64,000 nucleotides of DNA. Origin: Thalia democratica (taxonomy: Eukaryota). The stretch is taken from NCBI GenBank assembly GCA_965202585.1, contig OZ241827.1, forward strand, positions 57,846,001-57,910,000. Reading direction: 5' to 3'. The notes beneath the pieces are model-generated. The model made no database searches. It worked only from the letters and a program-made list of their open reading frames with translations, and had not been told where the DNA came from. Numbering within the stretch: position 1 is the first letter of the stretch; every line of letters starts with the position of its first letter. The translations under genes were made by a program, and so were the position numbers. Shown here piece after piece: positions 3,001 through 64,000 of the stretch.

Positions 3001-6000
3001 TCAACATTATTATAATTTTTTTTTCTTTTACTTTTTGGTGTAAGTTTTGGGATCTTTAATAAAAGACAAACTACTAATGTTTTTTAAGGTCTGGTTGTTT
3101 GTTTAAACAACTTGTAAAATTATTTATTAATATTTAGAACTTTAATGCTAATAAATACTTCATGCTTTCGTTATTTTTACACAATATCACATTATGTACT
3201 TTGACTTTCTTAAATTAATTAGGTTTTTTAATTTTCTTTGAAAACGAAGTACACACTATTATAAGTTGTAGACATATAAAAACTATACTTTTGTTAAATT
3301 ACTTTATAATAATACACAAAAATAAAGAGTAGGAACTTATTTTATTATCGATTTTTTTTTACAATAAACGGGAGAATAAGTTAATCTTTACACGTTTTGC
3401 TAAACCAATCATTTCTGCAGTGTTACATGGTTATTAATGCGTGACAATTGCGTAGTCTTGACAACTAAAAAACAAATTACATCAGCGAACTAATCGTTCA
3501 TTTGTTTTTAAAAATATTTCAAGTATCTTTCAATCAACTTTTTTATTGTCTATTTTAATCGGTAGATGACAAGTTTTATTTAAAATATTTGGAGCGAATA
3601 AGTTTGAATGCTAAGTTAATCCGTTTTGATGAAAAATACAACGATGAATCAAACAAGTTATCATAACACAATCAGAACTTATAATGTATGCATTTTTTAT
3701 GTTAAACTTGTAATAAATCTAATGTTATGTTTAAAGATTTGTTGGCATATTTATAAGATACTTTCATTATCATTGCGAACTTTGTGAAGAAAAATTTTTC
3801 TTATGAAATAACAGGGATTATATATCCTTGGTTAGAGTTTTCGTCAACGGTACCATTTAAGGGTTTCTTTTTATGAACTTCCACATTAGAGGAAACACTT
3901 GTTTTAAAAGTTTTTAACAAGGCATTACATAAATTAAGTTTGTTTTTAATCTCAAGAGCTATTGAGGTTCTTAAAACAAATGCACTTTTGAATTTGAAAA
4001 CTCGATCATAAGCATCAACTTTGTTTAGACTAAAAACATTTTTTTTTCGGATACAATTAATACGCATCAGTAGCTCAAAATATTTTGTATACATTATTAG
4101 CGTCTGTTGCGTGGTAAAAACAAAAAATTTGATTTATTACCCCAGTATGTCAGGTCGTGTGTGTACTTTGACCTAAGACCTCCAATTATGATTGGTTCGT
4201 GTTTACATATGTTTTAATGTTTGCTGAGAGTTGTAAGCTTGTATATTAAAAAAAAAACCATCTGCTGCGCCCTGTACATGTGTTTCGTATAAAGCATAAA
4301 GTTTATGTGGCGTTAAAATTTAAGCTAGATATAAAAGTAAATTAAAAAACTAAAATAAATCCCATGAAATTCATATGCCTGTATGCAAATGCGAAATTAT
4401 GCAGTTGCATTTTTCGGCTTTAATTATCACTTTTTTTTTTATGTTATTTTAATTTAAAAGCATCTCTTTTTTTATGAAAAAATATTAAAACATCTAACTA
4501 ATTCTTACAGTTGACAACCAAGTTTTTAAAAAATAACACTTTAAAAATGAAAGAAATAATAATGTATCTTTGACATTTCTTACTTTATATGTTAATAGAC
4601 AGTTTGTTTTATAAATGTCAAAAAAAAATTATAGTCATTTTTGTCAAAAAGGTAGTTAAAAGATAAACTTGTACATAACTAATAGTATGATATACAAAAT
4701 TTTTCTCAATTGTAACTGAACAAAAAGCTTTCAAGAACTTTTAAAATTAAGATTATTTGATTAATGTTAATAGCAAAGTGCAGTTTTGCTTGATGTCTTT
4801 GCTTTCAAATAGTCAAGTAACACGTTAACTTTAGTAAAGGCTGTTTAAGTAATAATAAATTTAATCTAAAGTAAATCTTGCACTAATTAATATACACGCT
4901 GAAATACAATCTTGTTACTAGTTTGCTATTACACGTCATGTTGATTAAACATTTAAGTTTACATGTAAAATAGTTGTTTTTGAAGTAATAAGTATTTAAA
5001 CGTGTACTATAACTGAAAACTATTTTTAATTTTTGTACTCTGTTAAACTATTTTAAAAAGAAGTTTATAGAGAAAATAGTTTAATTAGCCTTAAACAGTT
5101 TTTATGTTTATTTTTTATAGATATAAACACCTTCAATTGACTAAAGGAACAAAGGCAGTGTATGAAAAATTAAATTTCGACTACTCAACAAAAAATATAC
5201 CCATAGCAACAAAACTTGATACAAACTAAAACTTCTAAATAAACTTAGAAATTTTTCCAGAAGGGTAAGACTTAAAATATATTTTTGTACTGATGAAGAA
5301 TATAATACAAACTTAATTGAAACAGAGAAACATATTAAATCCATATTTATACCGAAATTAACAGATGAACTTAGATAGTTTGAAAATGAAATCTTCAATT
5401 TAGTTAAACAGTTAGTTTACATATTAACTGTTCCATTAAATTATTTAACTAGATTTATGAAATTTTTCAGTGACTTTGAGTTTTGTTAATGTTTTGTTGA
5501 TACTTGGCTTAAAACTCCAATTTTGGATAGTTTTTAATTCCATTTAGATAAATTTCAAGGTATAGATACCTGTTAACTTAAAAAAAAGCTCTTAATTTAA
5601 TTAATTTTTTTGACTCATTATATTAATTAAATGCATTTCGTTTTAAAGTTAGTACTAATTTTACCTAACTATACACTGGTAAGCTTGAATTTTCAAATAT
5701 CTAACATATTAGCTTTTTGTTTAGATTCTCATGCATGAATAAATTTTAAATAACATTATACATAAGCAACATTGTTATGTGCAGTTTACTATCTATTTTA
5801 CTTGAAGTGGTCTCAATTTTTTCTCATCGAAACATGGTTGTAAATAAATGATTTAATTTCCACATCTTTATTTGTACAGATAGAAACGAAAAAAAAGTTT
5901 TTATATAAGGTTTAAGAAAGTTTTTCTTTATCATAAGACAACATTTGCTATTCTTAAAAAATCACAAATTTTAATTGATAATCTCATTAGCTACCATTGA

Positions 6001-7396
6001 AAAAATAAAATACAAATAGAAATTTAAGGATGCATACATTTGTTATATTTTCTGTGCATAATATTGATAACAAGTTAATATATAGTTATAAGTAAGAGGG
6101 GTTACAAAAAACATCAGTATTCCTTTAAAAAGTGAAAACATAGTGTAAATAACAAAATTCTATAAAAAAACACGTATTCTTAAAAAACGCCACGAAAGTT
6201 TAATTGCTAAAGTATAATTATTCAGTTACTTCTAATTATATTAAGATTTGTTACATTATAAACTGCAACTGTAAATTTGAGCAAGCCCATATTTGACAAT
6301 TTCAATTAAAAACGGGTGTAGATTACAACAAAAACACAAAGCCGTCATAACAAGTCAAATTGAACAATAGTTGAACTTTTGCACCTGTAAGTTTTTTCAA
6401 TTAGACGCAGTAATTATGTTTACAAAACTGTCAAAAGGGGGGACACAATTTTGAATTAAATTCTCAGAGTTGACAAAACAAGTTTGCTATTTTAATGAAT
6501 CATTTAATTGTTAATTATGATGTTGTCTCACGTGAAAATATTTCTGTCTCGGCATAGTTTGTTTTTCCTTATTGAATGTCAATAAAAGAGCAAAAAAATC
6601 ACTATCAGTAAAGTTAAGTTTTTTAAAGTATTATTTTTGTTTAAAAATTTATTTTTTTTATTGTGGAAATTTAAGGTAAAAATTGTTTTAAACTTTTATA
6701 TTTTATTAAAATAAAGGCAAAGCTACCAATATAGTTGAAAATAAGATAAATGTCAAACTATAAAATTTAATTAAAAAGAAAATTGTGACTTGGTATGTCT
6801 TATTCTAAAATATACTTATAAAGCAAAAATTATTTGCTTACATTATGTAGTATCATTTAATCATGAGTGCATGAGCTATAAAAACTTTGAATAATATGAA
6901 ATATATTAAAGACATTAAAAATGCAATAATACTGTTTTATTTAAATAACATGCTATATATCCTTAGTTACTTATGTAACTACAGCTGTTTTGTATAGAGT
7001 ATAACATCTACAACAAATTTTTTGTTCTTTTCAAAAGTGGGCACTTGCTCTAAGGTGCATATAAATTGATTTATGGACACCATTAATGTCACTTTCGCCC
7101 GAACTTTGTGACCAAATAAAATTTAACTTTAAAGCAATGTTGTTTAAAAACAAAGCTTTCCAAAAGTCATAATTGTTTTTTGGTTAATACTAGAACCATG
7201 ACATTTATAGTTTAATAAACTTACCTCTAAAAATTTGCAATGTCTAGATATACAATACCTAAACTTATGGCAACTATGCTGTGCATAAAAAATGTAGTAC
7301 TTTTAATATATACACACATGTTCTATTGATTAAAAAACAGTATTTATTTGTTTTTATAAAACATAAACAGCCCTAGACAGGACGTTAAAATGTATC

Positions 7397-7508
7397 TGTG
7401 GTGTATCGACTTGTAAACCGAAAGGTTCTTAGTGCACCAGCTTCTGGACCAAATATTTTGAGCGTTTTTTTTTTTCGTTCACTAAACTAATAAATATAAA
7501 ATAATGAC
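7397..7508 (+). repeat. Short dispersed repeat relic (~110 bp), similar to 27134-27240
   Basis: Shared TGTGGTGTAT-GACT-G..AAC.GAAAGG...ACCAG...GACCAAA..TTTTGAGCG..T-rich..ATAATGAC. Confidence 0.55.
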
Positions 7509-7726
7509 TTTCGACAAATAGGGTTAAGTCGCTTTAACATGATTTTGATGTATTCAAGTTGCACATTGATATAATGACAAAAAATCTCATATGTTTTTCC
7601 TCAAGCTTAATAAACAGCTAGTGAAATAAAGGTAGATATTAGTACTTTCTTAAAATTAATGTTCGTTGATATTTTAATAAGTTAGGCTTTCACAGTCTTT
7701 TTCTGAAACATGAGAATCTAATCAAC

Positions 7727-7742
7727 TATATATATATATATA
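7727..7742. repeat. (TA)n microsatellite
   Basis: tatatatatatatata; shorter in the right arm. Confidence 0.6.
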
Positions 7743-8254
7743 ATTTAAAGCTTTCAATCTTATAAATTTCTTTTAAATTACTTTTTACTTATGAAAAAGT
7801 TTTTATTTTATTTTTTTAGAAGTTGTTTTTAATAATATGACTCGGTATTAGAATCATGCAACTTAAGTATATTAACTTAACTAAGCATTCAGGACTTCAA
7901 TAAACAGACGGTATATCTAATTAGAGTTTGAAATTTGTTTAATTAATGTTCAGTGAACAGAATCAAAATAAAAAATACACACAGTGCATAAGAACTTATA
8001 TTAATATGTTTGATGAAAACTGGCTTTTAATTTGTAAAATTAACATTTATATCGGAAAAACTGTTTTATTAGTTCCAATAGAAAACTTAAAAAGTTTAAA
8101 TCATATATTTAACTATGACCAATAAAAAAAGGAAAAAAAAATAACTGAGTCTATTTTTAGATGGTTCTAGTTAGAAAAGCTTCACACGTACCTTTTTTTT
8201 TAAACAAAGCAAAACAATTTAACAAAGCAGTCATACATTTTTAATAGTTTACAC

Positions 8255-8839
8255 CAGGCACCTAGCTTGGTAGGTTTCTGCAAATCTGCAGAAACGTTTA
8301 CCTATGTGCGAAAAAACTTGCTTTTATTTCAGTTTGAAAAGACTCTGCTTTTTTAGCTTTTAGTATTCATTTATACTTAGTTATGCACTCCTGAAAAATA
8401 ATTTTGACATATATGTACTCTTTAGCATTTTTACTGTCGTAAGAATTAAACGAATTAAATACATCTAATTTGTATACATTTAGCGCGTTAAAGATTTAAT
8501 TAGTCATAAAGCTGGATTGCAAAATCGATTCTAATGGAAGCTTTTATTCAAAAATCAAAATCATACAATTTTATATTACAAAAATTTGCATAAATTAATG
8601 ATGTTTCTATTGACTACGTTAAATGTTTGGTTTTAAACAATAAAAATGATTTTAAGTTAAATTGTGATTTTCTTATACTTACTTTCAATAAAAGTTTTAT
8701 GGGTTTACACAAGTGGCAACAAATAAAGAGTCATAGGGGGTGTGGACCAAAATAAATAGCCTTGAATACAGTTATCACCCATACTTCAACATCCAACTTT
8801 TGAAGTATTAACATAACTGTTGAGCTAGCTACGTCCCTG
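8255..8839. mobile_element. Non-autonomous hAT-type DNA transposon (MITE), 585 bp, left arm only
   Basis: 8-bp TSD GTTTACAC at 8247-8254 and 8840-8847. Imperfect TIRs CAGGCACCTAGCT and CAGGGACGTAGCT (reverse complement of the right end). The right arm has the empty site (atgtaaac at 61350-61357), and the arm-to-arm coordinate sum jumps by about 590 here. Confidence 0.85.
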
Positions 8840-10424
8840 GTTTACACCAATTGCTTAAAGTAACATTTTCATGGTACGTCAAAAAAAAACTTATATATTT
8901 AAGTGTTATTAACTATATTAACTAAAAACTTATATTAGTATATTGACTTAAACACGTTGTCCTAAACAAGTCTAGACTTGTAAGCACACAAGACTGTTTG
9001 CCTTATGAACGAAGTTGTATAAAGTTTATTTGCATTTTGTGATAAACAAGACTGTAAGACCATAAACTAAAAGTTTTGGTAAAAATGTTTTTCTTCGGAA
9101 TTAAAAAAAAAGGTTACAAATTCAACCTAGTTTGATAAAATGTGTTAAAACGTCTAGATAAAGCTGCAAACTTAAGAAAATTAAAAATTGAAAACTAATA
9201 AGTTATTCGAAAAAATTGTTTTATAATTTCGTAAATAGTTCTTTTAAAATTAAAATTTAATTGAAAACTTTTGCTTTTATCAAAATCATGTAAATTGCGT
9301 AAGTATGTTTTCATGCAAGTTTTATCTTCTTCAGACTTACTTCAAATTATTGAAAAAAATTTTGGCTTACTTTTAAACTAACCATCAAAGCTTGTATTAA
9401 TAAGGTTTGGTGCACTCAAAACTGGATCCAAGTCAAGTTTAAATTTTAGTGCAAGCTCGGTTGTTTACTTGTAATTTATTAAGATATTTTGATAAACAAA
9501 CTGCAAAGAACAAATCAAACGCAAATGATCAGTCATAATAATAAAGATGGATGACGTTTTTGCTTGAAAGAAAAATCATCAAAAATGTTTCAAAAACACA
9601 AAGATCAAAAGAACATATGAATTCACGCTATTCTTACATTCAAACACAAATTGACCATTTAATGTTGCTTATTTAAAGTATAGAAAAATATTGTATAACT
9701 AAACAACAATTTGTAAAAGGCGTTAATCCAGCGCTATAAACTGTTGACTGACAAATTCAGAATTGGACGAGTAAATCTGCTGTAATTTCAAATTCTTTAG
9801 CATGTTATATATTAAGATTGATTTTACAACTTTCGAACGCATCTTTTGAAGTCAAACGCTTCTTTCAACGCTCTTTAATGTTCGGAAAGCGCCATTGTCA
9901 TTTATTGCTCAATAAAATTAACCAAAGCTGTTTGTTATTTCAACTTCTGTTGTTATAAATTGAAAAAATATCTTTTTATTTCTTTTAAGCTTTTGTAAAT
10001 TTTTCAATATAGTATTCTGAAAGTTAGAGTAAGTTTATAGACTCAAAAACGATTCCTCCAAAGTTTTATTTTAGGGAGAATAAAATAAATCTACGCAGTT
10101 TTTCATTTAATGTATTCACATAGTAAATTGAATATATGCACTTTAACGGTTGAACTATTAGATTATAGATAGGATAAAAACAAACTTGCGTATATAAAAA
10201 ATGAGAAAATACTTTTTCAAACCAGCAAATTGCACTTTTTATTTATTGTATTTTTAAAGTTGTATTTTTTTAAAGTTTACTTTACTTTTAAAACTTTTGA
10301 GGAAAATTTCATGGAAAGAGTTGTAAATAGTAAAATAATAATACCTAAAACTCAATAAACTTAAACTTAATATTTTTTTCAACAAATATCACAGCTGAGA
10401 AAAGTTGATGAATTTAAATTTAGT

Positions 10425-10650
10425 ACTGCATTGCATATCAGACCATGTGCTACTTACTTTTTTTCGCCATAATGTAAACTACTGACAGTGCAGTTACAGC
10501 AGAACACATTTTTCACTGCAACACCTATTACGAGTGAGCAAATGGGAAAATGAAGCAATTATGCACTTAATTCGAGCTGAACACAGTATTACCTCATGCA
10601 CCTGCTATTCCATTACAGGTGCTGTCATTATCTTCTTCTTAGTTTGCCTT
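10425..10650. promoter_or_regulatory. Upstream conserved non-coding block with an inverted E-box pair (partner ~59575-59810)
   Basis: GC-richer and more conserved between arms than its flanks; CACCTG 10599-10604 and CAGGTG 10616-10621. Confidence 0.35.
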
Positions 10651-11329
10651 TTGTAATGTTACAAACGTACTTATAAATGATAAAATAGATACAACAAAAT
10701 ATTCTAATGTATTCTTCATGATTTTTAAGCATATAATTTAGGACACTTGGCTTTCAACAGTGGACGATTTTTTTTAAAATAAATTTTTCAAAACAACTGG
10801 TACTTTTAAATAACTCAGCACAGTATAAATAAAACTTATTTACGTTCTACATTTCATTTATTCTTTTAAATTAGAGTTATTTTGTTTGAATATAGTTTAG
10901 TTAAAGCTTAGTCTAAGTAGATAAATATTACTTAAATATTTTTTAAAGTTTTAATTTTGTGTTATTTTTTTAAGTTTAAACAAAACTAATCAAAATCTAT
11001 TTCCAACTTTAAAACTGTCTTTTGAAAAAATCTAAAAAAATGTTACCAAATATTAAGTGATAAGCACCAGCCGTTTGATCTATACTTTTAGTTTATTATG
11101 TTATTATAAAAATTTAGTTAACAATGAAAAATCACTATCTTTTTTATATTTCTTAATTTTTTTGCCAAGATTAATAAAAATAATTTTAATACAAAAAAAG
11201 TGTGAGAAATTCTTAAGAAATACAGTACTTTATATAGACCTTAGATTGCGGTTATCAAAACTTGTTGTCGAGATAAAAATACTAAAAAATATAAAAGAAT
11301 GAAGTGAAAATTTTATAAACTTTAATTTT

Positions 11330-11409
11330 CAACAAATGAAGTGATGCTTAGCTGCTAGTGAGATGTTCTAACACTTATTGTTTGTAATTTTAATTAAATT
11401 AAACTTTAG
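11330..11409 (+). other. Putative non-coding 5'-UTR exon of copy A (5' end approximate)
   Basis: Perfect donor AG|GTGAGT at 11410, conserved in both arms; acceptor ctctgcag| at 13002, 24 nt before the ATG. Confidence 0.4.
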
Positions 11410-11794
11410 GTGAGTCGTTTAATTAACCCAGGATGCATATTTGTTTGATATTTATTATAAGAATAGAAAATTTTCTAGCAATTAGCACAAGAGTACTTTG
11501 TAAACATATTTTTGTTAACAAGTTAATATTTAAATACTTTAAAAGTTATTGTTTGTTTTATATTCAACTTTACAAAAAAAGTAAATTTTGTGTTAAACTT
11601 ATCATCAATTTTAAGCTTCTTAATTCACTTTTTATTCATAGATATTTTGAAAAGCTACTTAGAACTTTATAACAGTATGTTTAAAAGATTTTAAACTTTT
11701 CGTATACTGTTTTTGATCAAAGTGGCAAAAACTAAACAAGGCTAAAATATGTATTAAACGAAAGTAATTTTTTGTAAACGAGAGAAAATTGTAG

Positions 11795-11888
11795 AAAAAA
11801 GCCGAACAGGCTGCTTTTTATCAGAGAAAAACTGAATTTTACCAATATTAGTTTAGGACCTGAAGTTTGCTAGTGCAAAAAAGCTCAG
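11795..11888 (+). other. Possible second 5'-UTR exon of copy A
   Basis: ttgtag| ... cag|gtaatt; both sites conserved in the right arm. Confidence 0.25.
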
Positions 11889-13026
11889 GTAATTATTCTA
11901 TTGACTACAAGGTAACAAAATCATAAAAAAAGGTTGTTCTTGACAACTTCTTAAAAACTTAAAACTGATTTGTATATTTGCAATTTGTTTTTTTTTTATC
12001 ACTAGAATTAGTAAAGTTTATTTTCCTCGAGTAATATCATAAATCTTACTTCGAATAAAATATTTTTTGCATTTTTAATTGTTATTTAAAACTTTTTAAA
12101 TGTTTTTAAAAACAAGGTTAATTCAGAAAAATGCAAAAAAAAATGTAACCAATAAAAAAATTAGGTTTAAGAATAACTAAGGTACATTAAATATTATCTG
12201 GAACAAGTTATAATTTTCTTAATTTTTACAGCTAGTTTTGTTTTTTTAATACAAGAGCAAGTTTAAATGTTTGATTAATTAAAGTTTGAGCAAACACTTT
12301 TTTTGACAGACAGCTAGTTAAACAGGCTTGATTGTTTAGAGGTAAACCTAATTAGCCTTTATAACTACAACTTAATATATAACTTTTTATTTTGCAGCTC
12401 AGTGCTTTAAAAACTGTTTGTTATACTTTTTACTGTCTTCATTTAGCTTTTTGATCGGCCTTTTTTAAAGTCGTGTTATAAATTTTATAATCGATAAGCA
12501 ATTGTTATTTTTATATGAGAAAAAAATTATATTTTGTTAAGAGATTTGTTTTATACATGTAAGTCAAAAATTTAACTATCATAGTAATTTTTTACTATAT
12601 AAAGTTAAACTTAGACGAACTTGACAACTGTATGTTCTAAACAAAAAGTATATTTTTAATTTAGTTCTAAATAAAAAAGATTATTTATGTTGAAGTTATG
12701 GATAAATAACTTTCTAAAATAACCGTTTTAATATATTTTTTAATGATACTTAAACTAATTTAAAATAATAATTAAAAGTTCTTGAAAAAAAAATCTGAAT
12801 TGTATTAGTTTTTTTAAGAAAAACTAATTTTGTTCAAGAAAAACAAAAACATGGTACTTTAATTAAAACTTAAATATTTGAAAACTATATAAAAACATAT
12901 ACTTTTTTAGAAAAATAAAACGACTCTCTTGATTATATAATGATTAAAAAAGACTTCAGGAAGAAATAATACATTGAAAATACCAACTTTGAGTCTCTGC
13001 AGATTGGAAAAATAAATTAATAAAAA

Positions 13027-13277
13027 ATGATCAGAAAAGTTCTGATTTGTAAAATCATAATCATCATCCTGGCCAATCAGTGTTGCAGCGGAAGCTTGGG
13101 TGCAAGTAGCAACACCGAGTCGTCTGTTGGCAAGTTTAGTGATGAGCTTAAACATTTAGATGTATTGGAGCCTGGGAAAGTTGCAGAAAGAGAAGTAAAA
13201 GAAAGTAGTGCGCAGACGGATCAAAATAAAAGGTCCATTCAGCTCGTTAAGCAGGCTGTCAAGGAAATAAGAGCCCA
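13027..13277 (+). CDS. Copy A exon 1: signal peptide plus short pro-like region with a KR site
   Basis: MIRKVLICKIIIIILANQCCSG...QNKRSIQ...; in-frame TAA TAA just upstream of the ATG; donor CA|GTGAGT (phase 2) fits exon 2. Confidence 0.8.
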
Positions 13278-53100: not shown

Positions 53101-56100
53101 GCTAACAGATAAAAAATACTTTAAAAAACCACAACCAAGGTTAAACTTGTCTTAATCTTAAAATACATATTAAATTTAAAATTCATTTATATCAGCTTTT
53201 ATTAGTTCTTAGGCTTAGATATTAATAAAAAACTCCCAATTTATAAAACAAAACTGTTTTGTTTAAATAGCGTTAAACAAAGTCTATAATTAAAAAAACA
53301 CCTTTCAAATGTTTGCAAAAATATTATCAACATTAATACTTGAGTTAATATAATTTTATGTAGTTTTAAGAACTTTAGTAAGTATGCTCAAAGTAATAAA
53401 ACAAATTTTTAAAACAAAACATGTATTTAATGCTATATCTAAAAAAAATAGTCAGAAAAAAAAAGTTTAAAGATACGTTTTAAATATTATGCCTGTTGTT
53501 TTTTTTTAAACTGAGACATGCCTATGAGACTACCTATGGCTTCTGTAACGACGCTACTCTCAACTGATGTCGTGTGTTTCAATTTGCTGACTGCGACTAA
53601 AAAAAGAAAAAAAAAAGTTTAAGAGGTTGTTGTAAGAAGTGAAGTACAGTAAAAGAGCAGGTTAATTAATTGAAAAAAGTTATAATTTTTTGAAATTAGT
53701 AGTTTTTGGTTTTTAATTTAGAATGCTAAACTGAATAAAAGCAAATACATTTTGTGTTATTAATGCCTGTGTTTCTAACGGTTTTTTATGATATTGTCCA
53801 GTTTTCATAACTTAAAAATCATAAATAAGAAAACCTGAGTATATAAATGTAAGTAAAAAATCTTAAACTATCTGAATATCATAAACAAAAATCAAATAAT
53901 ACTTGTATAAGATAAAAAATTGCTTTATAACTAGTACACAATACGCATACAATGTTTATGCGATCCTCTAATTTACTAAAATACTTTTAAACACTCTTTA
54001 CACCTACAAAATGTTTTCTAGTAGCTCGTGCAAAACTCATACACTACTAAATAACTATCTTTTTCAAGTACTAAGTTTTAAAGGTATAACAGTTATAAAA
54101 AGTATTAATACCTGTCAACAAAGTTACAAAAAAGACTTTAAGTACGGTATTAAATCATAAAGCTAGTACTTTCAACAGCAGTTTAATGGTTTCTAACATC
54201 TAAGGCTGAAAGTTTTATTGTTATCAGAACGTGCTTTAATGTCTTGAAACTGGTAGTAAAAGTTAAAAAATCTTTGGTGTATTTGTTTAATTGCATTTAC
54301 GATTAAGTCATTTGAACATCAAAGTATCAGTCAAATATAGGGTGTGCCGTATAAGCAAGACTGGCCTCCGACATTAAATTATAAAGTTTTCTATCTTGCT
54401 ACTTAAACTGATTAAAGTCATTCTTTTCGTGTTTACCAGTTTTAAACTTCTGCAGAACTATGAACTTTATTTAGTTATTTTGGCTTTCAAATGTTTTAAT
54501 AGTATCATTTATAAAGCTACACAGGATATTGTATTCCTAAAATTTTACTATGTATTGTATTGTTACTATTAATAAATTTTGATTATTTTACTATGGGTTG
54601 ATGTTTTTTAACGTAGTGTTTCTGAGTAAATATAATTTTTTGATCCAAGATATATTAAATAGCTTAACAATGTAGAGTAGCCTAGTCTAATCAAAAGAAT
54701 ACTAAAATAAAACTCTTACTTAAAAAATACTAAATATTTTCAACCTTGTAAAACATCTTAACAAGAGTAAAAATAAATTTATAGAGTTTTAGTAAGTTTT
54801 TTTCATAAATGAAGATATATATATTTTTTAAATAAATATCAGCTCCGTGAAACTCAACTATCTACTTTTATTATGTTGAAGTAAACATAACTGTAATATT
54901 TTGTAATTTTCAAATTTAGTAGCTTACCAAAAACAAATGAACCAATTATTACTCAAAAAAACCTATGCACTATAACTGTAAAATTTTTTACTAAATTTGT
55001 TGATTAGCAACCGTTTTTTAAGCATAAAAAATCGGGTAATAGTTTTGTTTTCGTAATGTTTTTTTAACATAAAACTTTATGAAAAGCTTTGTAATAGTTA
55101 AGTCAATTAATCGATAACTTTTCAAACAAAGCTTGTTAATAAATAAACAAACATCAATTACCTACAAGTATTAATTTGCCTGTGATGTTTACTTTTTAAG
55201 CGACGGTTTTCAAAAGTTTAAATGACAATCGGACACTTTATTTTTTGTTTGCAAAAAATCCGTAAACGTTTGCAACTTCTGCAATATCGTTCCCGGTTTA
55301 TTTACACTAACAGTTTTTTCTACATTACATGTTTTCTAAATAAAATCAAGCATAATGAAGCTGAATTGAGTTTTCAAGTTTGAAATTGCAGTGCAATAAC
55401 TTTACTTGATTTTTGTACTTTTGTAAAACATAAAATTATTTTTTCGTACTTATTAACTTTAATTATCTAAAAAGAAAGCACTAAACTTCTGGTTTATGTA
55501 TAAATTGTGTGATATTTGTAAAGTGCTCCTTTATTATACATAATTATATATAGATTTATATTTTTTAGTTGTGAAAAATATTTTAAATATACTTTTTCAA
55601 CGCTACCATTGTTTTTTTTTTATTATTAAATGACTGGTTAAAAATATGAAGTTTTCAAATTTTATCATACTTCTATAAAAATACATAACCTCTACAAATA
55701 ATTTCAATAAAGACATTTAAACTTGATTGAACTAGACAAACAAAACCAATAGAAAACTCTTAGCAGATGGAAATCTTTACAAATCTCTGTTTAGACAGTT
55801 TCTTTTGTTCGGAGCATCACAAAAACAATTTTCTTTCAGCTCATGACATGAAATTATACCTTTTTTGCCACCGCACTTACGCCATAGACCAAATGGCCCT
55901 TCGCTTTATCATAAGTGAAAACCCATTAAAACATGACGAAATAGTTTACAAATCAAATGTACGGCGAGAAAAAAAAACAGGAAATATACTAACTTAAAGG
56001 TGCTTATTACATTCTAGCTCGGCTGTTCTATTCCTCAGCAGAGCTCAGACACATACTTGAAATGTTTCGCTTTAATAAAAGGTTTTAATCGGACGTTTTG

Positions 56101-57198
56101 CTGGGTTTCGATGGTTTAAGATTTCAAATATTATTATTGGCAGGCCGCAGCTGAGCTATGAATAAAGTTTTGGTTTTGTTAATTATGACATACCTCCTAA
56201 GCGCGATTAGCCAAATTACTACTTAGAACAGTTTCGACAAATATTTGAGTTTAATTAGCAAGCTTGTTGCGTTTCAACTCGAACGATGAAATGAAGCAGT
56301 AGAAGTAAATTAAATATATGCCCAGTCATCCAGTAAACTTAATACGTAAAGCACACAACTTTGCTTTTATGGTAAGTTGTTTAAGTAGAGTGAAATTTAT
56401 ACGATGTTTGCCTTTGGAAAACAGTAGCTCAATAAAGTTTTTATTGCATATTTAATTAAGTAAATTTCAAAGGCTTTAACAATAGTTTGAACAAGTTATT
56501 TTATCAGTTATGTTTAATAACGGCTATTGAACTAGGTGTAGTTAATATTTTTCGCTTTTCGTTATTATGACAAAACAGAATAAAAAAATATATATATATA
56601 ACCGTATTGTTTAGAAAACTGTAGATAATATTTGAAACTTAAATCGTTTTTAAGTTTGTAAACCATCTTTTAAACTTGCACGACCCTTTTGTTTTCTTTA
56701 ACTAATTAATAGATGAGGGTAAGGTAAGGTTAAAAGTGTCGGCTCTGAATGATTTTTGGCATCAAACAGCTAAAAAGTTACTGTAACAACATGCTATCGA
56801 ATGAAACTGAAAAAAAAAGTAGCTGACCATTATTTAGTTCATCCGTGTAACTTTTACAAACGAAAAAGTCTTATTTTACAAGATGTAAATTTTTACGTTT
56901 AAATAAACAAACAGTTGTAATTAAATAAAATCAACTGCCAAACTCACTGGGCTCTTATTTCCTTGACAGCCTGCTTAACGAGCTGAATGGACCTTTTATT
57001 TTGATCCGTCGGCGCACTACTTTCTTTTACTTCTCTTATTGCAACTTTCCCAGGCTCCAATACATCTAAATGTTTAAGCTCATCACTAAACTTGCCAACA
57101 GACGACTCGGTGTTGCTACTTGCACCCAAGCTTCCGCTGCAACACTGATTGGCCAGGGTGATTATTATGAGTTTACAAATCAGAACTTTGCTGATCAT
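41145..57198 (-). CDS. ADAMTSL1/3: ADAMTS-like (punctin/ADAMTSL1/3-type) protein, copy B, 18 coding exons, 1096 aa
   Basis: Exons 57198-56948, 51024-50805, 50719-50531, 49219-49048, 48915-48723, 48308-48127, 47296-47175, 47081-46931, 46746-46461, 46319-46063, 44507-44325, 44071-43943, 43872-43657, 43523-43340, 42091-41884, 41760-41642, 41506-41301, 41167-41145. Splice sites are intact, no stops or frameshifts were seen, and the only indel is an in-frame +12 nt in exon 7. Confidence 0.88.
41301..41506 (-). CDS. Copy B exon 17 (TSP1)
   Basis: Mirror of 28687-28892; strong donor G|GTGAGA. Confidence 0.92.
41642..41760 (-). CDS. Copy B exon 16 (TSP1)
   Basis: Mirror of 28435-28553. Confidence 0.9.
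41884..42091 (-). CDS. Copy B exon 15 (TSP1)
   Basis: Mirror of 28104-28311. Confidence 0.92.
42953..43059 (-). repeat. Right-arm counterpart of 27134-27240
   Basis: Mirror copy. Confidence 0.55.
43340..43523 (-). CDS. Copy B exon 14 (TSP1)
   Basis: ECTDACGSGG variant. Confidence 0.92.
43657..43872 (-). CDS. Copy B exon 13 (Ig4)
   Basis: Mirror of 26316-26531; 6 amino-acid differences. Confidence 0.9.
43943..44071 (-). CDS. Copy B exon 12
   Basis: Mirror of 26117-26245. Confidence 0.85.
44325..44507 (-). CDS. Copy B exon 11 (Ig3)
   Basis: Mirror of 25681-25863. Confidence 0.9.
46063..46319 (-). CDS. Copy B exon 10 (Ig2/Ig3)
   Basis: Mirror of 23872-24128. Confidence 0.92.
46461..46746 (-). 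CDS. Copy B exon 9 (Ig2)
   Basis: Identical to copy A. Confidence 0.92.
46931..47081 (-). CDS. Copy B exon 8
   Basis: Identical to copy A. Confidence 0.8.
47175..47296 (-). CDS. Copy B exon 7 (linker, +4 aa)
   Basis: KPQKIKPTVNK versus KPHSLNK in copy A. Confidence 0.75.
48127..48308 (-). CDS. Copy B exon 6 (Ig1)
   Basis: Mirror of 21923-22104. Confidence 0.85.
48723..48915 (-). CDS. Copy B exon 5
   Basis: Mirror of 21313-21505. Confidence 0.85.
49048..49219 (-). CDS. Copy B exon 4 (TSP1)
   Basis: Mirror of 21009-21180. Confidence 0.88.
50531..50719 (-). CDS. Copy B exon 3 (TSP1)
   Basis: Mirror of 19504-19692. Confidence 0.92.
50805..51024 (-). CDS. Copy B exon 2 (TSP1)
   Basis: Mirror of 19199-19418. 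Confidence 0.92.
56948..57198 (-). CDS. Copy B exon 1 (signal peptide)
   Basis: MISKVLICKLIIITLANQCC; same donor as copy A. Confidence 0.8.
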
Positions 57199-58818
57199 TT
57201 TTTATTTGATTTATTTTTCCAATCTGCAGAGACTCAAAGCTGGTATTTTCAATGTATTATTTCTTCCTGAAGTCTTTTTTAATCTTTATATAATCAAGAG
57301 AGTCGTTTTATTTTTCTAAAAAAGTATAGGTTTTTATATAGTTTTCAAATATTTAAGTTTAATCAAAGTACCATATTTTTGTTTTTCTTGAACAAAATTA
57401 GTTTTTCTTAAAAAAACTAATACAATTCAGATTTTTTTTCCAGAACTTTTAATCATTATTTTAAAGTAGTTTAAGTATCATTAAAAATATATCAAAACGG
57501 TTATTTTAGAAAGTTATTTATCCATAACTTAAACATAAATAATCTTTTTTGTTTAGAACTAAATTAAAAATATGCTTTTTGTTTAGAATATACAGTTGTC
57601 AAGTTCGTCTAAGTTTAACTTTATATAGTAAAAAATAACTATGATAGTTAAATTTTTGACTTACATGTATAGAACAAATCTCTTAACAAAATATAATTTT
57701 TTTATCATATAAAAATAACAATTGCTTATCGATTATAAAATTTATAACACGACTTTAAAAAAGGCCGAACAAAAAGCTAAATGAAGACAGTAAAAAGTAT
57801 AACAAACAGTTTTTAAAGCACTGAGCTGCAAAATAAAAAGTTATATATTAAGTTGTAGTTATAAAGGCTAATTAGGTTTACCTCTAAACAATCAAGCCTG
57901 TTTAACTAGCTGTCTGTCAAAAAAAAAGTGTTTGCTCAAACTTTAATTAATCAAACATTTAAACTTGCTCTTGTATTAAAAAACAAAACTAGCTGTAAAA
58001 AATAAGAAAATTATAACTTGTTCCAGATAATATTTAATGTACCTTAGTTATTCTTAAACCTAATTTTTTTATTGGTTAGGTTTTTTTTGCATTTTTCTGA
58101 ATTAACCTTGTTTTTAAAAACATTTAAAAAGTTTAAAATAACTATTAAACATGCAAAAAATATTTTCTTCGAAGTAAGATTTATGATATTACTCGAGGAA
58201 AATAAACTTTACTAATTCTAGTGATAAAAAAAAAAAACAAATTGCAAATATACAAATCAGTTTTAAGTTTTTAAGAAGTTGTCAAGAACAACTTTTTTTT
58301 ATGATTTTGTTACCTGGTAGTCACTAGATTAATTACCTGAGCTTTTATGCACTAGCAAACTTCAGGTCCTAAAATAATGTTGGTAAAATTCAGTTTTTCT
58401 CTGATAAAAAGCAGCCTGTTCGGCTTTTTTCTACAATTTTCTCTCGTTAACAAAAATTACTTTCGTTTAATACATATTTTAGCCTTGTTTATTTTTTGCC
58501 ACTTTGATCAAAAACAGTATACGATAAGTTTAAAAAAACTTTTAAACATACTGGTATAAAGTTCTAAGTAGCTTTTCAAAATATCTATGAATAAAAAGTA
58601 AATTAAGAAGTTTAAAATCGATGATAAGTTTAACACAAAATATATTTTTTTTGTAAAGTTGAATATAAAACAAACAATAGCTTTTTAAAGTGTTTAAAAA
58701 ATTAACTTGTTAACAATAATTTGTTTACAAAGTACTGTTGTGCTAATTGCTAGAAAATTTTCTATTCTTATAATAAATATCAAACAAATATGCATCCTGG
58801 GTTAATTAAACGACTCAC

Positions 58819-58900
58819 CTAAAGTTTAATTTAATTAAAATTACAAACAATGAGTGTTAGAACATCTCACTAGCAGCTAAGTATCACTTCATTTGTTGAA
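58819..58900 (-). other. Putative non-coding 5'-UTR exon of copy B (5' end approximate)
   Basis: Mirror donor (actcac 58813-58818); acceptor at 57224-57225. Confidence 0.4.
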
Positions 58901-61900
58901 AATTAAAGTTTATAAATTTTTTCACTTAATTCATTTACATTTTTCTAGTAATTTTATCTCGACAACAAGTTTTGATAACCGCAATCGAAGGTCTATATAA
59001 AGTATTGTATTGCTTAAGAATTTCTCACACCTTTTTTGTATCAAAATAATTTTTATTGGTTTAGGCACAAAAATTAAGAAATATAAAAAAGATAGTGATT
59101 TTTTCTGTTACTAAATTTTTATAATAACATAATAAACTAAAAGTATAGATCAAACGGCTGTTAATTATTATTTAATATAAGGTAACAATTTTTTTAGATT
59201 TTTTCAAAAGACAGTTTTAAGGTTGGAAATAGATTTCGATTAGTTTTGTTTAAACTTAAAAAAATAACACAAAATTAAAAATTTAAAAAATGTTTAAGCA
59301 AGTATTTATCTACTTAGACTAAGCTTTAACTAAACCAAGTTCAAACAAAATAACTCTAATTTAAAAGAATAAATGAAATGTAGAACGTAAATAAGTTTTA
59401 TTTATACTGTGCTGAGTTATTTAAAAGTACCAGTTGTTTTGAAAAATTAATTTTAAAAACATCGTCCACTGTTGAAAGCCAAGTGTCCTAAATTATATGT
59501 TTAAAAATCATGAAGACTTACATTAGAATATTTTGTTGTATCTATTTTATCATTTATAAGTTAGTTTTTAACATTACAAAAGGCAAATTAAGAAGCAGAT
59601 AATGACAGCACCTGTAATGGAATAGCAGGTGCATGAGGTAATACCGTGTTCAGCTCGAATTAAGTGCATAATTGCTTCATTTTCCCATTTGCTCACTCGT
59701 AATAGGTGTTGCAGTGAAAAATGTGTTCTGCTGTAACTGCACTGTCAGTAGTTTACATTTTGGCGAAAAAAAAGTAAGTAGCACATGGTCTGATATGCAA
59801 TGCAGTACAATTTTAAACTTATCAATTTTTCTCAGCTGTGATGTTTGTTGAAAAAAAAATATTAAGTTTAAGTGAGTTTTGAGTATTATTATTTTACTAT
59901 TCACAATTCTTTCTATGAAATTTTCCTCATAAGTTTTAAAAGTAAAGTTTAAAAAAATACAACTTTAAAAAGTGCAATTTGCTGGTTTGAAAAAGTATTT
60001 TCTCATTTTTTATTTACGCAAGTTTTATTTTTTTCCTACCTATAATCTAATAGTTCAACCGTTAAGTGCATATATTCAGTTTACTTTAATAATACATTAG
60101 ATAAAAAACTGCGTAGATTTATTTTACTCTCCCTAAAATAAAACTTTGCAGGAATCGTTTTTCAGTCTACAAACTTACTCAAACTTTTAGAAAACTTTAT
60201 TGAAAAATTTACAAAAGCTTAAAAGAAATGAAAAGATATATTTTCAACTTACAACAACAGAAGTTGAAATAACAAACAGCTTTGGTTAATTTTATTGAGC
60301 AATAAATGACAATGGCGCTTTCCGAACACCAAAGAGCGTTGAAAGAAGCGTTTGACTTCAAAAGGTGCGTTCGAAAGTTGTAAAATCAATCTCAATATAT
60401 AACTTGCTAAAGAATTTTAAATTACAGCAGATTTTCTCGTCCAATTCTGAGTTTGTCAGTCAACAGTTTATAGGGCTGGATTAACGCCTTTCACAAATTG
60501 TTGTTTAGTTATACAATATTTTTCTATACTTTAAATAAGCAACATTAAATGGTCAATTTGTGTTTGAATGTAAGAGTAGCGTGAATTCATATGTTCCTTT
60601 GATCTTTGTGTTTTTGAAACATTTTTGATGATTTTCTTTCAAGCAAAAACGTCATCCATCTTTATTATTATGACTGATCATTTGCGTTTGATTTGTTCTT
60701 TGCAGTTTGTTTATCAAAATATCTTAATAAATTACAAGTAAACAACCGAGCTTGCACAGAAAATTTAAACTTGACTTGGATCCAGTTTTGACTGTATCCT
60801 TATTAATACAAGCTTTGATGGTTAGTTCAAAAGTAAACTAAAACAATTATTTCAATAATTTGAAGTAAGTCTGAAGAAGATAAAACTTGCATGAAAACAT
60901 ACTCACGAAATTTACATAAATTTGATAAAAGCAAAAGTTTTCAATTAAATTTTAATTTTAAAAGAATAATTACGTAATTATTAGACAATATTTTAGAATA
61001 AGTTAATAGTTTTCTATTTACTTACAATTTTATAAAGTTTGCAGCTTTATCTAGACGTTTCAACGCATTTTATCAAACTAGGTTGAATTTGTAACTTTTA
61101 GTATTTTTTAATTCCGAAGAAAAACACTGTTACCAAAATTTTTAGTTTATGGTCTTACAGTCTTGTTTATTACAAAATGCAAATAAACTTTTTACAACTT
61201 CGTTCATAAGGCAAACAGTCTTGTGTGCTTACAAGTCTAGACTTGTTCGGACAACGCGTTCAAGTCAATATACTAAAAATACAATTCCAAACACTTAAAT
61301 ATATAATTTTTTTTTTGACCTACCATGAAAATACTACTTTAAGCAATTTATGTAAACTAGTAAAAATGTATGACTACTTTTTAAAATTGTTTTGCTTTGT
61401 TTTTGAAAAAAGGTACGTGTGACGCTTTTCTAACTAGAACCATCTAAATATAGACTCAGTTAATTTTTTTTAAATATTGATCATAGTTAAATGTATGATT
61501 TAAACTTTCTAAGTCTTTTATTTTAATTATAATAAAAAGTTTTTCCGATATAAATGTTAATTTGACAAATTAAAAGCGAGTTTTTATCAAGTATATGAAT
61601 ATAAGTTTTTATGCACTATGTGTATTTTTTATTTTGATTCTGTTCACCGAATAATAGTTAAACAATTTTAAAACTCTAATTTAAAATACTGTTTGTTTAT
61701 TGAAGTGCTAAACGCTTAGTTAAGTTAATATACTTAAGTTGAATAATAATTTTAATCCCGAGTTATACTATTAAAAACAACTTCTAAAAGGAATGAAAAA
61801 AGAGTTTTCATAAGAAAAAAGCTTAATTTAAAAGAAATTTATAAGACTGAAACCTTTAAATTCCGTCATATATAGTTGATTAGATACTCATGTTTCAGAA

Positions 61901-62092
61901 AAATACTGTGTAAGCCTAATTTATTAAAAAATCAACGAAAATTAATTTCAATATAGTACTAATACCTACCTTTATTTCACTAGCTGTTTATTAAGCTTGA
62001 TGAAAAATATATGAGCTTTTTTGTCATTATATCACTGTGTAACTTGAATACATGCAAAATCATATTAAAGCGATTTAACCCTGTTTACAAAA

Positions 62093-62204
62093 GTCATTAT
62101 TTTATATTTATTAGTTTATTGAACGACAAAAAAAAACGCTCAAAATTTTTGGTTTAGGAGCTGGTGCACTAAGAACCTTTCGGTTTTCAAGTCGATACAC
62201 CACG
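62093..62204 (-). repeat. Right-arm counterpart of 7397-7508
   Basis: Mirror copy. Confidence 0.55.
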
Positions 62205-64000
62205 GATACCTTTTAATGTCCTGTCTAGGACTGTTCATATTTTATAAAAGCAATTAAATACTGTTTTTTAATTAATAGAACATGTATGTATATATTAAAG
62301 GTACAAATTTTATGCACAGCATATTGCCATAAATTTAGGTATTGTATATCTAGACATTGCAAATTTTTAGAGGTAAGTTTACTATACTATAACTGTTATG
62401 ATTTTAGTATTAAACAAAAAAAAAACTTTTGGAAAGCTTTGTATACAACAGCATGGCTTTAAAATTAAATATCATTTGGTCACAAAGTTGAGGCAAAAGT
62501 GACATTAATGGTGTCCATAAAGCAATTTACATGCACCTTAGAGGACGTAACCACTTTTGAAAAGAACAAAAACTTTGTTGTAGATATTTATACTCTTTAA
62601 AAAACAGCTGTAGTTAATAAGTCATTAAATATTATGTTATTTTAATAGAACAGTATTATTGCGTTTTTGATGTCTTTTATATATTTCATATTATTCAAAA
62701 TTTTTATAACTCATGCACTCATGATTAAATGATACTACATAATGTTAGCAAACAATTTTTGCTTTATAAGTATATTTTAGAATAAGACATATCAAGTCAC
62801 AATTTTGTTTTTAATTAGTTTTTTATAGTTTGAAATTTATGTTATTTTCAACTATATTGATAGCTTTGCATTTATTTTATTAAAATATAAAAGTTTAAAA
62901 CTGTTTTTACCCTAAATTTCCAAAATAAAAAAATTCAATTTTCAAACAAATATAATACTTTAATTAACTTAATCTTACTGATAGTGATTTTTTTTGCTCT
63001 TTTATTGACATTCAATAAGAAAAAAAAAAACTATGCGGAGATAGAAATATTTTCACATGAGACAACATCATAATTAACAATTTAATGATTCATTAAAACA
63101 GCAAATTTGTTTTGTCAACTCTGAGAATTTAATTCAAAATTGTGCCCAACTTTTGACAGTTTTGTAAACATAATTACTGCGTCTAATAGAAAATACTTAC
63201 AGGTGCAAAAGTTCAACTATTGTTCAATTTGACTTGTTATGACGGCTTTTTGTTTTTGTTGTAATCTACACCCGTTTTTAACTGAAATTGTCAAATATGG
63301 GCTTGCTCAAATTATCAGTTGCAGATTATAATGTGACAAATCTTACGGTTAGAAGTAACTGAATAATTATACTTTAGCAACTAAACTTTACGGGCGTTTT
63401 TTAAAAACACATGATTTTTTTTGTTTTTTTTTTTGTTATCTACAGTATGTTTTTACTGTTTAAAGCAATACTGATGTTTCCTGTAACCTCTTTTACTTAT
63501 AACTGTATATTCACTTGTTATCAATACTATGCACAAATATATAAATAGATATAACAAATGTAAGGATCTTTAATGTACTGTTTGTATTTTATATTTTTTA
63601 TTGGTAGCTAATGAGATTATCAATTGAGTTTGGTGTTTTTTTAAGAATAAAAAATATTGTTTTAAGATAAAGAAAAAATTTCTTAGACCTTATGTACAAT
63701 TTTTTTTTCGTTTGTATCTGTATAAATAAAGAATTGCAAACTAAATACTTTATTTACAACCAGGTTTCGGTGACAAAAAATTACGACCTCTTCAAGTAAA
63801 ATAAAATAGTTAACTGCACATAATAATGTTGCTTATCTATAATGTTATTTGAAATTATTCATGCATGACAATCTAAACAAAAAACCAAAATGTTAGATAT
63901 TCGAAAATTCAAGCTACAGTGTATAGTTAAGTAAAATTAGTACTAACTTTAAAACTAATTGCAATTAATAAATATAATGAGTTAAAAAAATTAACTCAAC

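What the first reader, a model, noticed from the sequence alone, without database searches (positions are those of the whole stretch)
5595..64000. Palindrome with arms of at least 23 kb holding two intact, tail-to-tail ADAMTSL paralogs
Seen: the arms mirror each other around an ~11.6 kb unique spacer centred near 35100. Both carry full open reading frames with conserved splice sites, and the only coding indel is in frame. Inference: this is an old inverted duplication with both copies still under selection, possibly maintained by arm-to-arm recombination as in other large gene-bearing palindromes. Two mis-joined haplotypes in a highly polymorphic animal is the main alternative. It is disfavoured because homology stops about 250 bp after the stop codons and the spacer is not self-similar.
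Basis: partly seen in the sequence, partly recalled or inferred. Interest (0 to 1): 0.75.

Follow-up and report, generated by a model that had tools for sequence, protein, structure and literature searches.

The report
Mirror-image ADAMTSL gene array palindrome
The window holds the centre of a real, gap-free mirror-image gene cluster, with four punctin/ADAMTSL-type genes facing four across an 11.6 kb spacer, in what is probably a pelagic tunicate; the two halves still exchange sequence, making it a clear but not unprecedented large gene-bearing inverted duplication.

Summary
The inverted repeat is real and much larger than reported. In the window, arms 5601-29285 and 40903-63994 (88-94% identical) flank an 11.6 kb spacer. 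Window 1-5600 pairs with DNA just past the window's end. In 264 kb of gap-free sequence the mirror runs over at least 129 kb on the left and 102 kb on the right. The cluster has four + genes facing four - genes.

The two window genes (L1, R1) are intact 999-codon paralogs. All splice sites are conserved, dN/dS is about 0.4, and introns carry 106 indels against none in exons. They are short forms (signal peptide, TSP1 repeats, Ig domains, TSP1 repeats) without the ADAMTSL Cys-rich/spacer module. They derive from an internal short-isoform unit still present in the neighbouring long genes.

Arm-to-arm gene conversion is supported by exact runs of 644 and 385 bp, overdispersed divergence and decay of identity at the inner edge. 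Mirror partners are sisters at the gene 3' ends, which supports block duplication of an older tandem array.

A haplotype mis-join is very unlikely. Independent contigs from two studies bridge the left junction, but the right junction is untested.

Earlier notes of this scan on this same stretch had already flagged the 644-bp tract and the short gene model. This is a new member of a known kind.

The parts
1..29285 (+). Left palindrome arm, window part. It continues at least 100 kb to the left of the window and holds the short gene L1. The long genes L2 and L3 lie upstream, outside the window.
   Evidence: inverted colinear matches at 94.0% (8840-29285), 87.9% (5601-8253) and 92% (1-5600, against DNA beyond the window's end).
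40903..64000 (-). Right palindrome arm, window part. It continues at least 79 kb to the right of the window and holds the short gene R1. The long genes R2 and R3 lie beyond the window.
29286..40902 (.). Spacer of 11.6 kb with 24% GC. It contains no convincing gene, and 29286-37200 is single-copy in the genome. It is not self-complementary.
   Evidence: genome matches only for the right third; no inverted similarity above AT-rich noise; only AT-rich ORFs.
13027..28897 (+). Gene L1, a short punctin/ADAMTSL-derived gene of 15 exons and 999 codons. Exons: 13027-13277, 19199-19418, 19504-19692, 21009-21180, 21313-21505, 21923-22104, 23445-23730, 23872-24128, 25681-25863, 26117-26245, 26316-26531, 26664-26847, 28104-28311, 28435-28553, 28687-28897. 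An alternative end is the donor at 28893 spliced to a micro-exon at 28997-29028.
   Evidence: model, open frame, splice sites; TSP1_ADAMTS and I-set hits; aligns only to residues 713-1829 of the Clavelina ADAMTSL1 guide; 3' end. The model rests on sequence only; no RNA data were available.
41296..57198 (-). Gene R1, the mirror paralog of L1. Exon lengths are the same, all AG/GT are conserved, and the frame is open. It differs from L1 by 34 amino acids, and its stop lies two codons later (alternative micro-exon 41195-41164).
23099..23742 (+). A 644-bp tract identical between the arms (partner 46449-47092). It covers 346 nt of intron and the whole of the exon at 23445-23730, and is a recent arm-to-arm conversion tract.
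   Evidence: the longest exact run, with a chance probability of about 1e-11 at the arm-wide difference rate of 4.85%.
28180..28564 (+). A second identical tract, 385 bp (partner 41631-42015). It spans the end of one exon, an intron and the next exon.
   Evidence: about 5e-6, interpolated from the printed values (3.3e-4 for runs of 300 or more, 2.3e-6 for 400 or more).
29114..29327 (+). Left inner edge of the arm. Identity to the right arm decays from 95% through 91% to about 80%, then stops. This is the arm/spacer junction bridged by independent contigs.
   Evidence: X1 record 4 (29201-29376, no differences) and X3 record 13 (29047-29532, 14 differences and 2 gaps).
40861..41074 (-). Right inner edge of the arm, the mirror of the left edge. 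It abuts the relic R0. It is not verified by independent data.
   Evidence: Searches found no metagenome contig carrying words from this place.
38778..40868 (-). R0, a relic last TSP1 exon (40659-40820) plus about 1.9 kb of 3' flank from a long-type paralog. It has the orientation of the right-arm genes and no mirror counterpart on the left. A dispersed repeat is inserted at about 39165-39910.
   Evidence: tblastn to guide residues 1782-1831; 77-78% identity to the tails of all seven long-type copies of the cluster; no Pfam hit, so degenerate.
8254..8839 (+). An interspersed repeat of about 566 bp, inserted in the left arm only.
   Evidence: the arm alignment breaks here; more than 2,000 candidate copies genome-wide at 85-91%.

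Best explanation
The window is the centre of a genuine mirror-image gene cluster of at least 365 kb on chromosome-scale contig C2. Four ADAMTSL-type genes on the + strand (L4-L1) converge on four on the - strand (R1-R4) across an 11.6 kb spacer.

The most likely history has four steps:
1. A tandem array of long ADAMTSL genes arose. Each long gene carries an internal first exon with its own ATG and signal peptide, which would give a short isoform.
2. A partial duplication turned that internal unit into a stand-alone short gene at one end of the array.
3. The whole array was then copied once, in inverted orientation, next to itself.
4. Since then the arms have diverged to about 80% identity where left alone. 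They have been repeatedly and patchily re-homogenised by gene conversion between the arms, most effectively near the axis, and also between tandem neighbours.

Shown: the geometry, the intact genes, purifying selection on both, the identical tracts, mirror-partner sisterhood, and one junction in independent samples. Inferred: that the duplication was a single block event, that conversion efficiency falls with distance from the axis, that the right arm is the original, and that the genes are expressed.
For: - Geometry. Identity is 94% for the inner 20 kb, 89.5% for the next 21 kb and 75-86% further out, with no N in 264 kb. One search places the last exons at 57703004+, 57762035+, 57843492+, 57874682+ | 57887299-, 57917930-, 57972023-, 58051352-. 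These lie about 6, 37, 91-119 and 170-178 kb from the axis.
- Gene integrity and constraint.
- Short-form origin: one search shows that L1/R1 match only guide residues 713-1829, whereas L2, R2 and R3 also match residues 24-180 and 382-446. Searches show a positional homologue of exon 1 in all four long copies. It has its own ATG and hydrophobic leader in L3, R2 and R3, and the same donor context.
- Conversion: exact runs of 644 and 385 bp; variance/mean 6.6, with windows from 0% to over 20%; edge decay; mosaic topologies, including a tract where same-arm copies group 36:3:3.
- Block duplication. Over the 3' 7 kb of the long genes, the mirror grouping (L2,R2)|(L3,R3) has 341 informative sites against 83 and 61.
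- Reality of the structure: the junction is bridged in runs from two studies and two organism labels; 19 of 29 variant letters equal R1's base, with a mixture of T and G at 28895 in X1; a mobile-element insertion private to the left arm.
Against:
- The public runs are short contigs, so copy-specific depth could not be measured.
- Exons of the long copies are star-like, at 94-96% for every pair, so the coding sequence alone does not show mirror sisterhood.
- L3 groups with L2 and R2 over about 9 kb, so the history is not a clean single event.
- L4, R4 and the outer boundary are known only from exon positions.
- The GC-bias signal expected from frequent conversion is marginal (rho -0.18, p 0.049).
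- No RNA data exist for either gene.
Confidence: 0.8

Rival explanations
1. Nested or stepwise origin. An old outer inverted duplication was followed by one or two later large re-copying events, about 52 kb and then about 20 kb (break-induced replication or a very long conversion across the axis). Under this reading the identity steps of 80%, 89% and 94% date three events rather than a distance-dependent rate of many small conversions.
For: One search shows three identity levels. One search shows a fairly sharp rise from 85% to 92-93% near window -19k. One search shows that the inner 20 kb is more uniform than the next zone.
Against: Within each zone divergence is still strongly overdispersed (variance/mean 3.9-7.3), with patches of 96-98% next to patches of 79-81%. 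The boundary near 8.3-8.8 kb is not sharp and coincides with a repeat insertion. The inner edge decays gradually.
Confidence: 0.13
2. Assembly artefact. Two haplotypes (or a haplotig) of one array were mis-joined in inverted orientation in a highly polymorphic animal.
For: Samples differ from the reference by 1-4.5% in single-copy DNA (table 8). That is not far below the 5% divergence of the inner arms. The right junction is unverified.
Against: The inner flanks of the two arms are unrelated sequences, so the arms cannot be alleles. The outer arms differ by 15-25% and by tens of kb in spacing. There is no gap in 264 kb. The left junction is bridged by contigs from two studies. The L-specific contigs next to the junction have word depths like the spacer contigs rather than half, although the tool warns that contig depth is weak evidence. 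There is also an arm-private transposon insertion.
Confidence: 0.04
3. A small ancestral palindrome (one gene pair) came first, followed by independent tandem duplications on each arm. Under this reading the 4+4 symmetry is coincidental.
For: Tandem repeats exist within each arm, with different periods (about 82 kb on the left and 55 kb on the right). Some tracts group same-arm copies (3:3).
Against: Mirror partners are sisters over the 3' 7 kb (341 against 83 and 61). Noncoding DNA between the genes is colinear in mirror image over more than 100 kb. The introns of the short genes are unalignable to those of the long genes, while L1/R1 are 95% alike. The short/long split therefore predates the arm split.
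Confidence: 0.03

Closest known systems
Large gene-bearing palindromes of mammalian sex chromosomes (human Y P1-P8 and the 26 human X palindromes; PMC8327919, PMC8600007)
   Same: Inverted arms of tens to more than 100 kb around a unique spacer, protein-coding gene families in the arms, and sequence exchange between the arms.
   Different: Those palindromes are defined by more than 99% arm identity, kept by frequent conversion. Here identity is 94% at best and about 80% in places, so conversion is patchy and slow relative to mutation. The arms hold a four-gene array rather than one or a few genes. The host is probably a tunicate, and linkage to a sex chromosome is neither shown nor expected.
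Ordinary inverted segmental duplications with interlocus gene conversion
   Same: Diverged inverted copies, mosaic identity, higher divergence at the edges, and paralogs that are retained.
   Different: The scale and the near-perfect mirror order of eight genes, and the fall of identity with distance from the axis.
madd-4/punctin of C. elegans, with long (MADD-4L) and short (MADD-4B) isoforms from alternative promoters (PMC11385328), and vertebrate ADAMTSL1/3
   Same: The long genes here have the ADAMTSL layout plus an internal first exon with its own ATG and leader. L1/R1 correspond to the short product: no N-terminal TSP1/Cys-rich/spacer module, and TSP1 and Ig repeats retained.
   Different: In L1/R1 the short form is a separate gene rather than an isoform, it is itself duplicated in mirror image, and exon 1 has diverged almost beyond recognition. 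Function and expression are untested.

Membership tests
Large palindromic amplicon (criteria of PMC8327919) | Inverted repeats longer than 8 kb around a spacer | tested here: met
   arms of at least 129 kb and 102 kb, with an 11.6 kb spacer.
Large palindromic amplicon (criteria of PMC8327919) | More than 99% nucleotide identity between the arms | tested here: not met
   94.0% for the inner 20 kb, 89.5% for the next 21 kb and 75-86% in the outer arms. Only short tracts reach 100%.
Large palindromic amplicon (criteria of PMC8327919) | Arm-to-arm gene conversion | tested here: met
   The evidence is statistical only. Exact runs of 644 bp (P about 1e-11) and 385 bp, overdispersion of 6.6 and edge decay. 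No population or pedigree data were available.
Large palindromic amplicon (criteria of PMC8327919) | Protein-coding genes in the arms | tested here: met
ADAMTSL proteins | N-terminal TSP1 followed by the ADAMTS cysteine-rich and spacer modules | tested here: not met
   L1/R1 align only to residues 713-1829 of Clavelina ADAMTSL1. There is no N-terminal module in the 15 kb upstream of L1. The neighbours L2, R2 and R3 match residues 24-180 (TSP1 and Cys-rich), but the spacer part was not detected by tblastn.
ADAMTSL proteins | Multiple ADAMTS-type TSP1 repeats | tested here: met
   PF19030 hits in six exon ORFs of L1. Four are above the curated cut-off of 23.8 bits (41.5, 24.8, 46.0 and 44.8). 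Two are just under it (23.5 and 22.1)..
ADAMTSL proteins | Ig (I-set) repeats between the TSP1 blocks, as in ADAMTSL1/3/punctin | tested here: met
   PF07679 hits in four exon ORFs, colinear with the Ig region of the guide.
ADAMTSL proteins | C-terminal PLAC domain (present in some members) | tested here: not met
   There is no PF08686 hit on the last exon ORF. The possible terminal micro-exon encodes only 10-11 residues.
MADD-4B-like short punctin | Begins at an internal first exon with its own signal peptide and lacks the N-terminal module | tested here: met
   the leader MIRKVLICKIIIIILANQCCSG; a positional homologue with ATG and leader inside L3, R2 and R3.
MADD-4B-like short punctin | Produced from the same locus as the long form through an alternative promoter | tested here: not met
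   L1/R1 are stand-alone genes 15 kb from the nearest long gene. Whether the long genes use their internal exon needs RNA data, and none were available.

The most novel reading that the evidence does not exclude
The locus is a natural ruler for intrachromosomal recombination. It is a mirror array of about 400 kb, in an animal that probably has no sex chromosomes. In it, homogenisation between inverted partners falls off with their distance from the axis (partners at about 6, 37, 100 and 175 kb). A short punctin isoform has also been released as a separate gene pair exactly at the axis. If the conversion tracts are polymorphic in populations, the distance dependence of conversion rate could be measured directly. 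The contigs of X1 and X3 at 27554-27812, which carry only R1-type letters, hint that they may be.
Probability: 0.3. Interest if true: 0.6.

Novelty: new member of a known kind. Interest (0 to 1): 0.45.

Why it matters
Large palindromes have been studied almost only on mammalian sex chromosomes. There, near-perfect arm identity hides the underlying dynamics.

This one is diverged enough (80-94%) for individual conversion tracts, edge effects and a gradient of identity from the centre outward to be read directly from the sequence. It also sits in a gap-free region of a non-vertebrate chordate.

It is also a worked example of an isoform becoming a gene. The internal short-isoform unit of an ADAMTSL/punctin gene, which is a synapse-organising matrix protein family in worms and vertebrates, was copied as a stand-alone gene, and both mirror copies are kept under selection.

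For annotation, the practical point is that the eight to nine paralogs and their mosaic similarity will confuse read mapping and orthology calls.

Tried and rejected
The outer boundary, L4, R4 and the ninth copy are therefore known only from match coordinates.
- Two exact-word scans of metagenome contigs for the right junction found nothing.
- The public runs hold only short contigs and none is on record as RNA. Depth, long-molecule continuity and expression could therefore not be tested. The tool itself warns against using contig depth.
- The representative search with one exon returned mostly generic multi-Ig proteins. Only the Clavelina and amphioxus ADAMTSL1 proteins were useful as guides.
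- The ENA contig L037, which encodes P0001, is 85-92% identical to every copy and so could not be assigned.
- Rfam found nothing in the window.
- A GC-biased conversion signal is marginal.
- A candidate extra exon at 23110-23260 was left out of the model, because the flanking exons join in frame without it. With or without it both copies stay open, since it lies inside the 644-bp identical tract.
- I did not submit spliced proteins to the search or fold tools, because they have no reference form.


Full report
**Observation.** A self-comparison of the window confirms the inverted repeat. Window 5601-8253 pairs with 63994-61351 (87.9%), and 8840-29285 pairs with 61357-40903 (94.0% over 20.6 kb, 267 gap columns). 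The window has no N. The break at 8254-8839 is a dispersed repeat of about 566 bp, with more than 2,000 candidate copies in the genome, present in the left arm only. With sensitive settings homology ends at about 29327 and 40861. The rest of the spacer shows only AT-rich noise against its own reverse complement.

**Larger context.** The window is C2:57846001-57910000 of an 801.8 Mb assembly. Window 1-5600 pairs at 92% with the DNA just beyond the window's end.

In this gap-free 264 kb, a colinear series of inverted matches runs from the axis out to both ends. Identity is 94.0%, then 89.5%, then 88.7%, then 75-86%. Each arm also contains direct repeats, with offsets of about 82 kb on the left and 55 kb on the right.

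Exon matches and a search of the genome with a full-length guide protein place nine paralogs on C2. Their last exons lie at 57703004+, 57762035+, 57843492+ and 57874682+ (L4 to L1), at 57887299-, 57917930-, 57972023- and 58051352- (R1 to R4), and at 58158589+. The first eight are mirror-ordered around about 57.881 Mb.

**The genes.** ORFs in the arms hit TSP1_ADAMTS (PF19030) and I-set (PF07679). A whole-library search with one exon gave, among many generic Ig proteins, P0083 and P0078. These are ADAMTS-like protein 1 of the ascidian Clavelina lepadiformis. P0118 is the amphioxus protein. P0083 has the full layout: TSP1, ADAMTS_CR_3, ADAMTS_spacer1, ten TSP1 repeats, Ig repeats and C-terminal TSP1 repeats.

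Mapped on the 264 kb, L1 (window 19194-28891) and R1 (41302-51029) match only residues 713-1829. L2, R2 and R3 also match residues 24-180 and 382-446, so they are long genes of 31-39 kb.

I built a 15-exon model for L1 from ORFs, paralog-conserved blocks and splice-site frames. It gives 999 codons starting with a signal-peptide-like leader. Projected through the arm alignment, R1 has identical exon lengths, all AG/GT sites and an open frame.

The 3' end is ambiguous. Either the CDS stops at 28895-28897 (in R1 two codons later, because of a T/G difference at 28895), or the conserved GT at 28893 splices to a 32-nt micro-exon at 28997-29028, with R1's counterpart at 41195-41164. Both readings leave both genes intact.

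**Selection.** L1 and R1 differ at 62 of 2,997 coding sites and at 34 residues. dN is 0.015, dS is 0.036-0.043, and dN/dS is 0.36-0.47. Substitution divergence is 2.1% in exons and 5.25% in introns. All 106 indels within the gene span lie in introns, where about 25 would be expected in exons under a uniform rate. Both copies have therefore been constrained since they last shared sequence.

**Origin of the short genes.** The second half of L1/R1 exon 1 has a weak match (32-35% identity, E 0.003-0.06) in all four long copies that I hold. The match lies in the same position in each, about 8 kb upstream of the shared TSP1 exon. In L3, R2 and R3 that ORF opens with its own ATG and a hydrophobic leader. 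It ends at the same donor context, AGAGCCCA|GT. L2 lacks the ATG.

This agrees with earlier notes s1-306635 and s1-287255. It parallels madd-4, whose long and short isoforms come from alternative promoters (PMC11385328). L1/R1 are thus stand-alone copies of an internal short-isoform unit.

Their introns do not align with those of the long genes, whereas L1 and R1 are 95% alike throughout. The short/long split is therefore much older than the L1/R1 split.

**History of the array.** An alignment of the 3' halves of L2, R2, L3 and R3 is mosaic. Counts of quartet-informative sites show the following:
- Over the 3' 7 kb, the mirror grouping (L2,R2)|(L3,R3) has 341 sites, the same-arm grouping 83 and the cross grouping 61.
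- Between -10.2k and -8.7k, the same-arm grouping has 36 sites against 3 and 3.
- Between -17k and -10k, L2, R2 and L3 are nearly identical and R3 sits on a long branch.

Exons of the long copies are 94-96% identical for every pair. L1/R1 are 97.9% identical. Short against long is 86-87% overall, but swings from 97% (E2) to 82% (E3), 68% (E12) and 95% (E13).

The simplest account is one block inverted duplication of an existing array, followed by exchange between the arms and between neighbours.

**Gene conversion.** The longest exact runs between the inner arms are 644 bp (23099-23742, of which 346 nt are intron) and 385 bp (28180-28564). At the arm-wide difference rate of 4.85%, the chance of any run of 644 bp or more is about 1e-11. 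For 385 bp it lies between the computed values for 300 bp (3e-4) and 400 bp (2e-6). This confirms note s1-287319.

Differences per 200-bp noncoding window are overdispersed. Variance/mean is 6.6 overall and 3.9-7.3 within zones, and windows range from 0% to more than 20%. Identity decays to about 80% over the last 170 bp of each arm. That matches the level of the outer arms and fits an edge that conversion tracts rarely reach. A link between identity and GC content is marginal.

**The spacer.** Window 29286-37200 is single-copy in the genome. The right 2.1 kb (38778-40868) matches, at 77-78%, the last exon plus 3' flank of every long-type copy of the cluster, in the orientation of the right-arm genes. 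I read it as the relic tail of a further copy, R0.

Because it continues the right arm's tandem order and has no mirror on the left, the right arm plus spacer is more likely the ancestral sequence, and the left junction the novel one. I give this moderate confidence; loss of a left-hand counterpart is not excluded.

**Artefact test.** One search found runs from four studies, all kept as short contigs and none on record as RNA. Laid on 25600-31500:
- A contig of X1 (29201-29376, no differences) and a contig of X3 (29047-29532, 14 differences and 2 gaps; another organism label and another study) bridge the left junction. Both lie in the stretch where the arms differ by 15-20%, so they are L-specific.
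- 19 of the 29 listed variant letters equal R1's base at that site, and site 28895 is mixed in X1. Both types therefore coexist in the samples.
- Samples differ from the reference by 1-4.5% in single-copy parts. The animal is polymorphic, but far less so than the divergence of the outer arms.

The unrelated inner flanks exclude allelism of the arms. The right junction could not be checked.

**Comparison and verdict.** The structure works like the large gene-bearing palindromes of mammalian sex chromosomes, but it fails their defining criterion of more than 99% identity (PMC8327919). It is better filed as an old, very large inverted segmental duplication of a gene array with patchy arm-to-arm conversion.

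The two window genes are ADAMTSL-derived but lack the defining Cys-rich/spacer module. The best hit to an ascidian, the marine-metagenome holders and other agents' notes point to a pelagic tunicate.

The finding is real and well formed, but it belongs to a known kind.

Noticed in passing
window 17750-18350 (partner 51880-52479): A GC-rich (about 40%) patch in intron 1 of L1/R1. It is 99% identical between the arms, against a background of about 95%, and occurs nowhere else in the genome. Part of it aligns weakly (72-76%) to the introns of L2 and R3. It has no Pfam or Rfam hit. It could be an unannotated exon, a regulatory element or another conversion tract.
   Followed up: partly
window 5128-5597: Two adjacent short interspersed repeats, of about 280 and 180 bp, with dozens of copies on many contigs at 75-88% identity.
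   Followed up: no
L2 internal first exon, window about -18560 to -18340 (outside the window; big 81440-81659): The internal short-isoform first exon keeps its ATG and leader in L3, R2 and R3. In L2 the ATG is missing, so L2 may have lost its short isoform.
   Followed up: partly
window 27554-27812: The contigs of X1 and X3 laid here carry R1-type letters at 4-5 of the L1/R1 diagnostic sites. Almost no L1-type depth is recorded. In those individuals the left copy may be converted to the R type over this stretch, which would be a polymorphic conversion tract. A filtering artefact is not excluded.
   Followed up: partly
exons of L1 against the long copies (window 19199-28894): Similarity between the short and long genes alternates sharply between neighbouring exons (E2 97%, E3 82%, E9 97-99%, E12 68%, E13 95%, E14 65-69%). 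E7 of L1/R1 is closest to R2 (96.5% against 90-91%). This suggests exon-sized exchange between short and long genes.
   Followed up: partly
window 39165-39910 and 37200-38175: Dispersed repeats in the right part of the spacer, with more than 30 copies at 67-76% on many contigs.
   Followed up: no
C2:20049759-20054787 (+) and C2:27478706-27479161 (-): Further ADAMTSL-type loci on the same chromosome, outside the cluster.
   Followed up: no
C2:58151198-58160890 (+), about 245-251 kb beyond the window's end (window 305198-314890): A ninth paralog on the + strand, head-to-head with R4. The cluster may therefore contain a second inverted arrangement.
   Followed up: no
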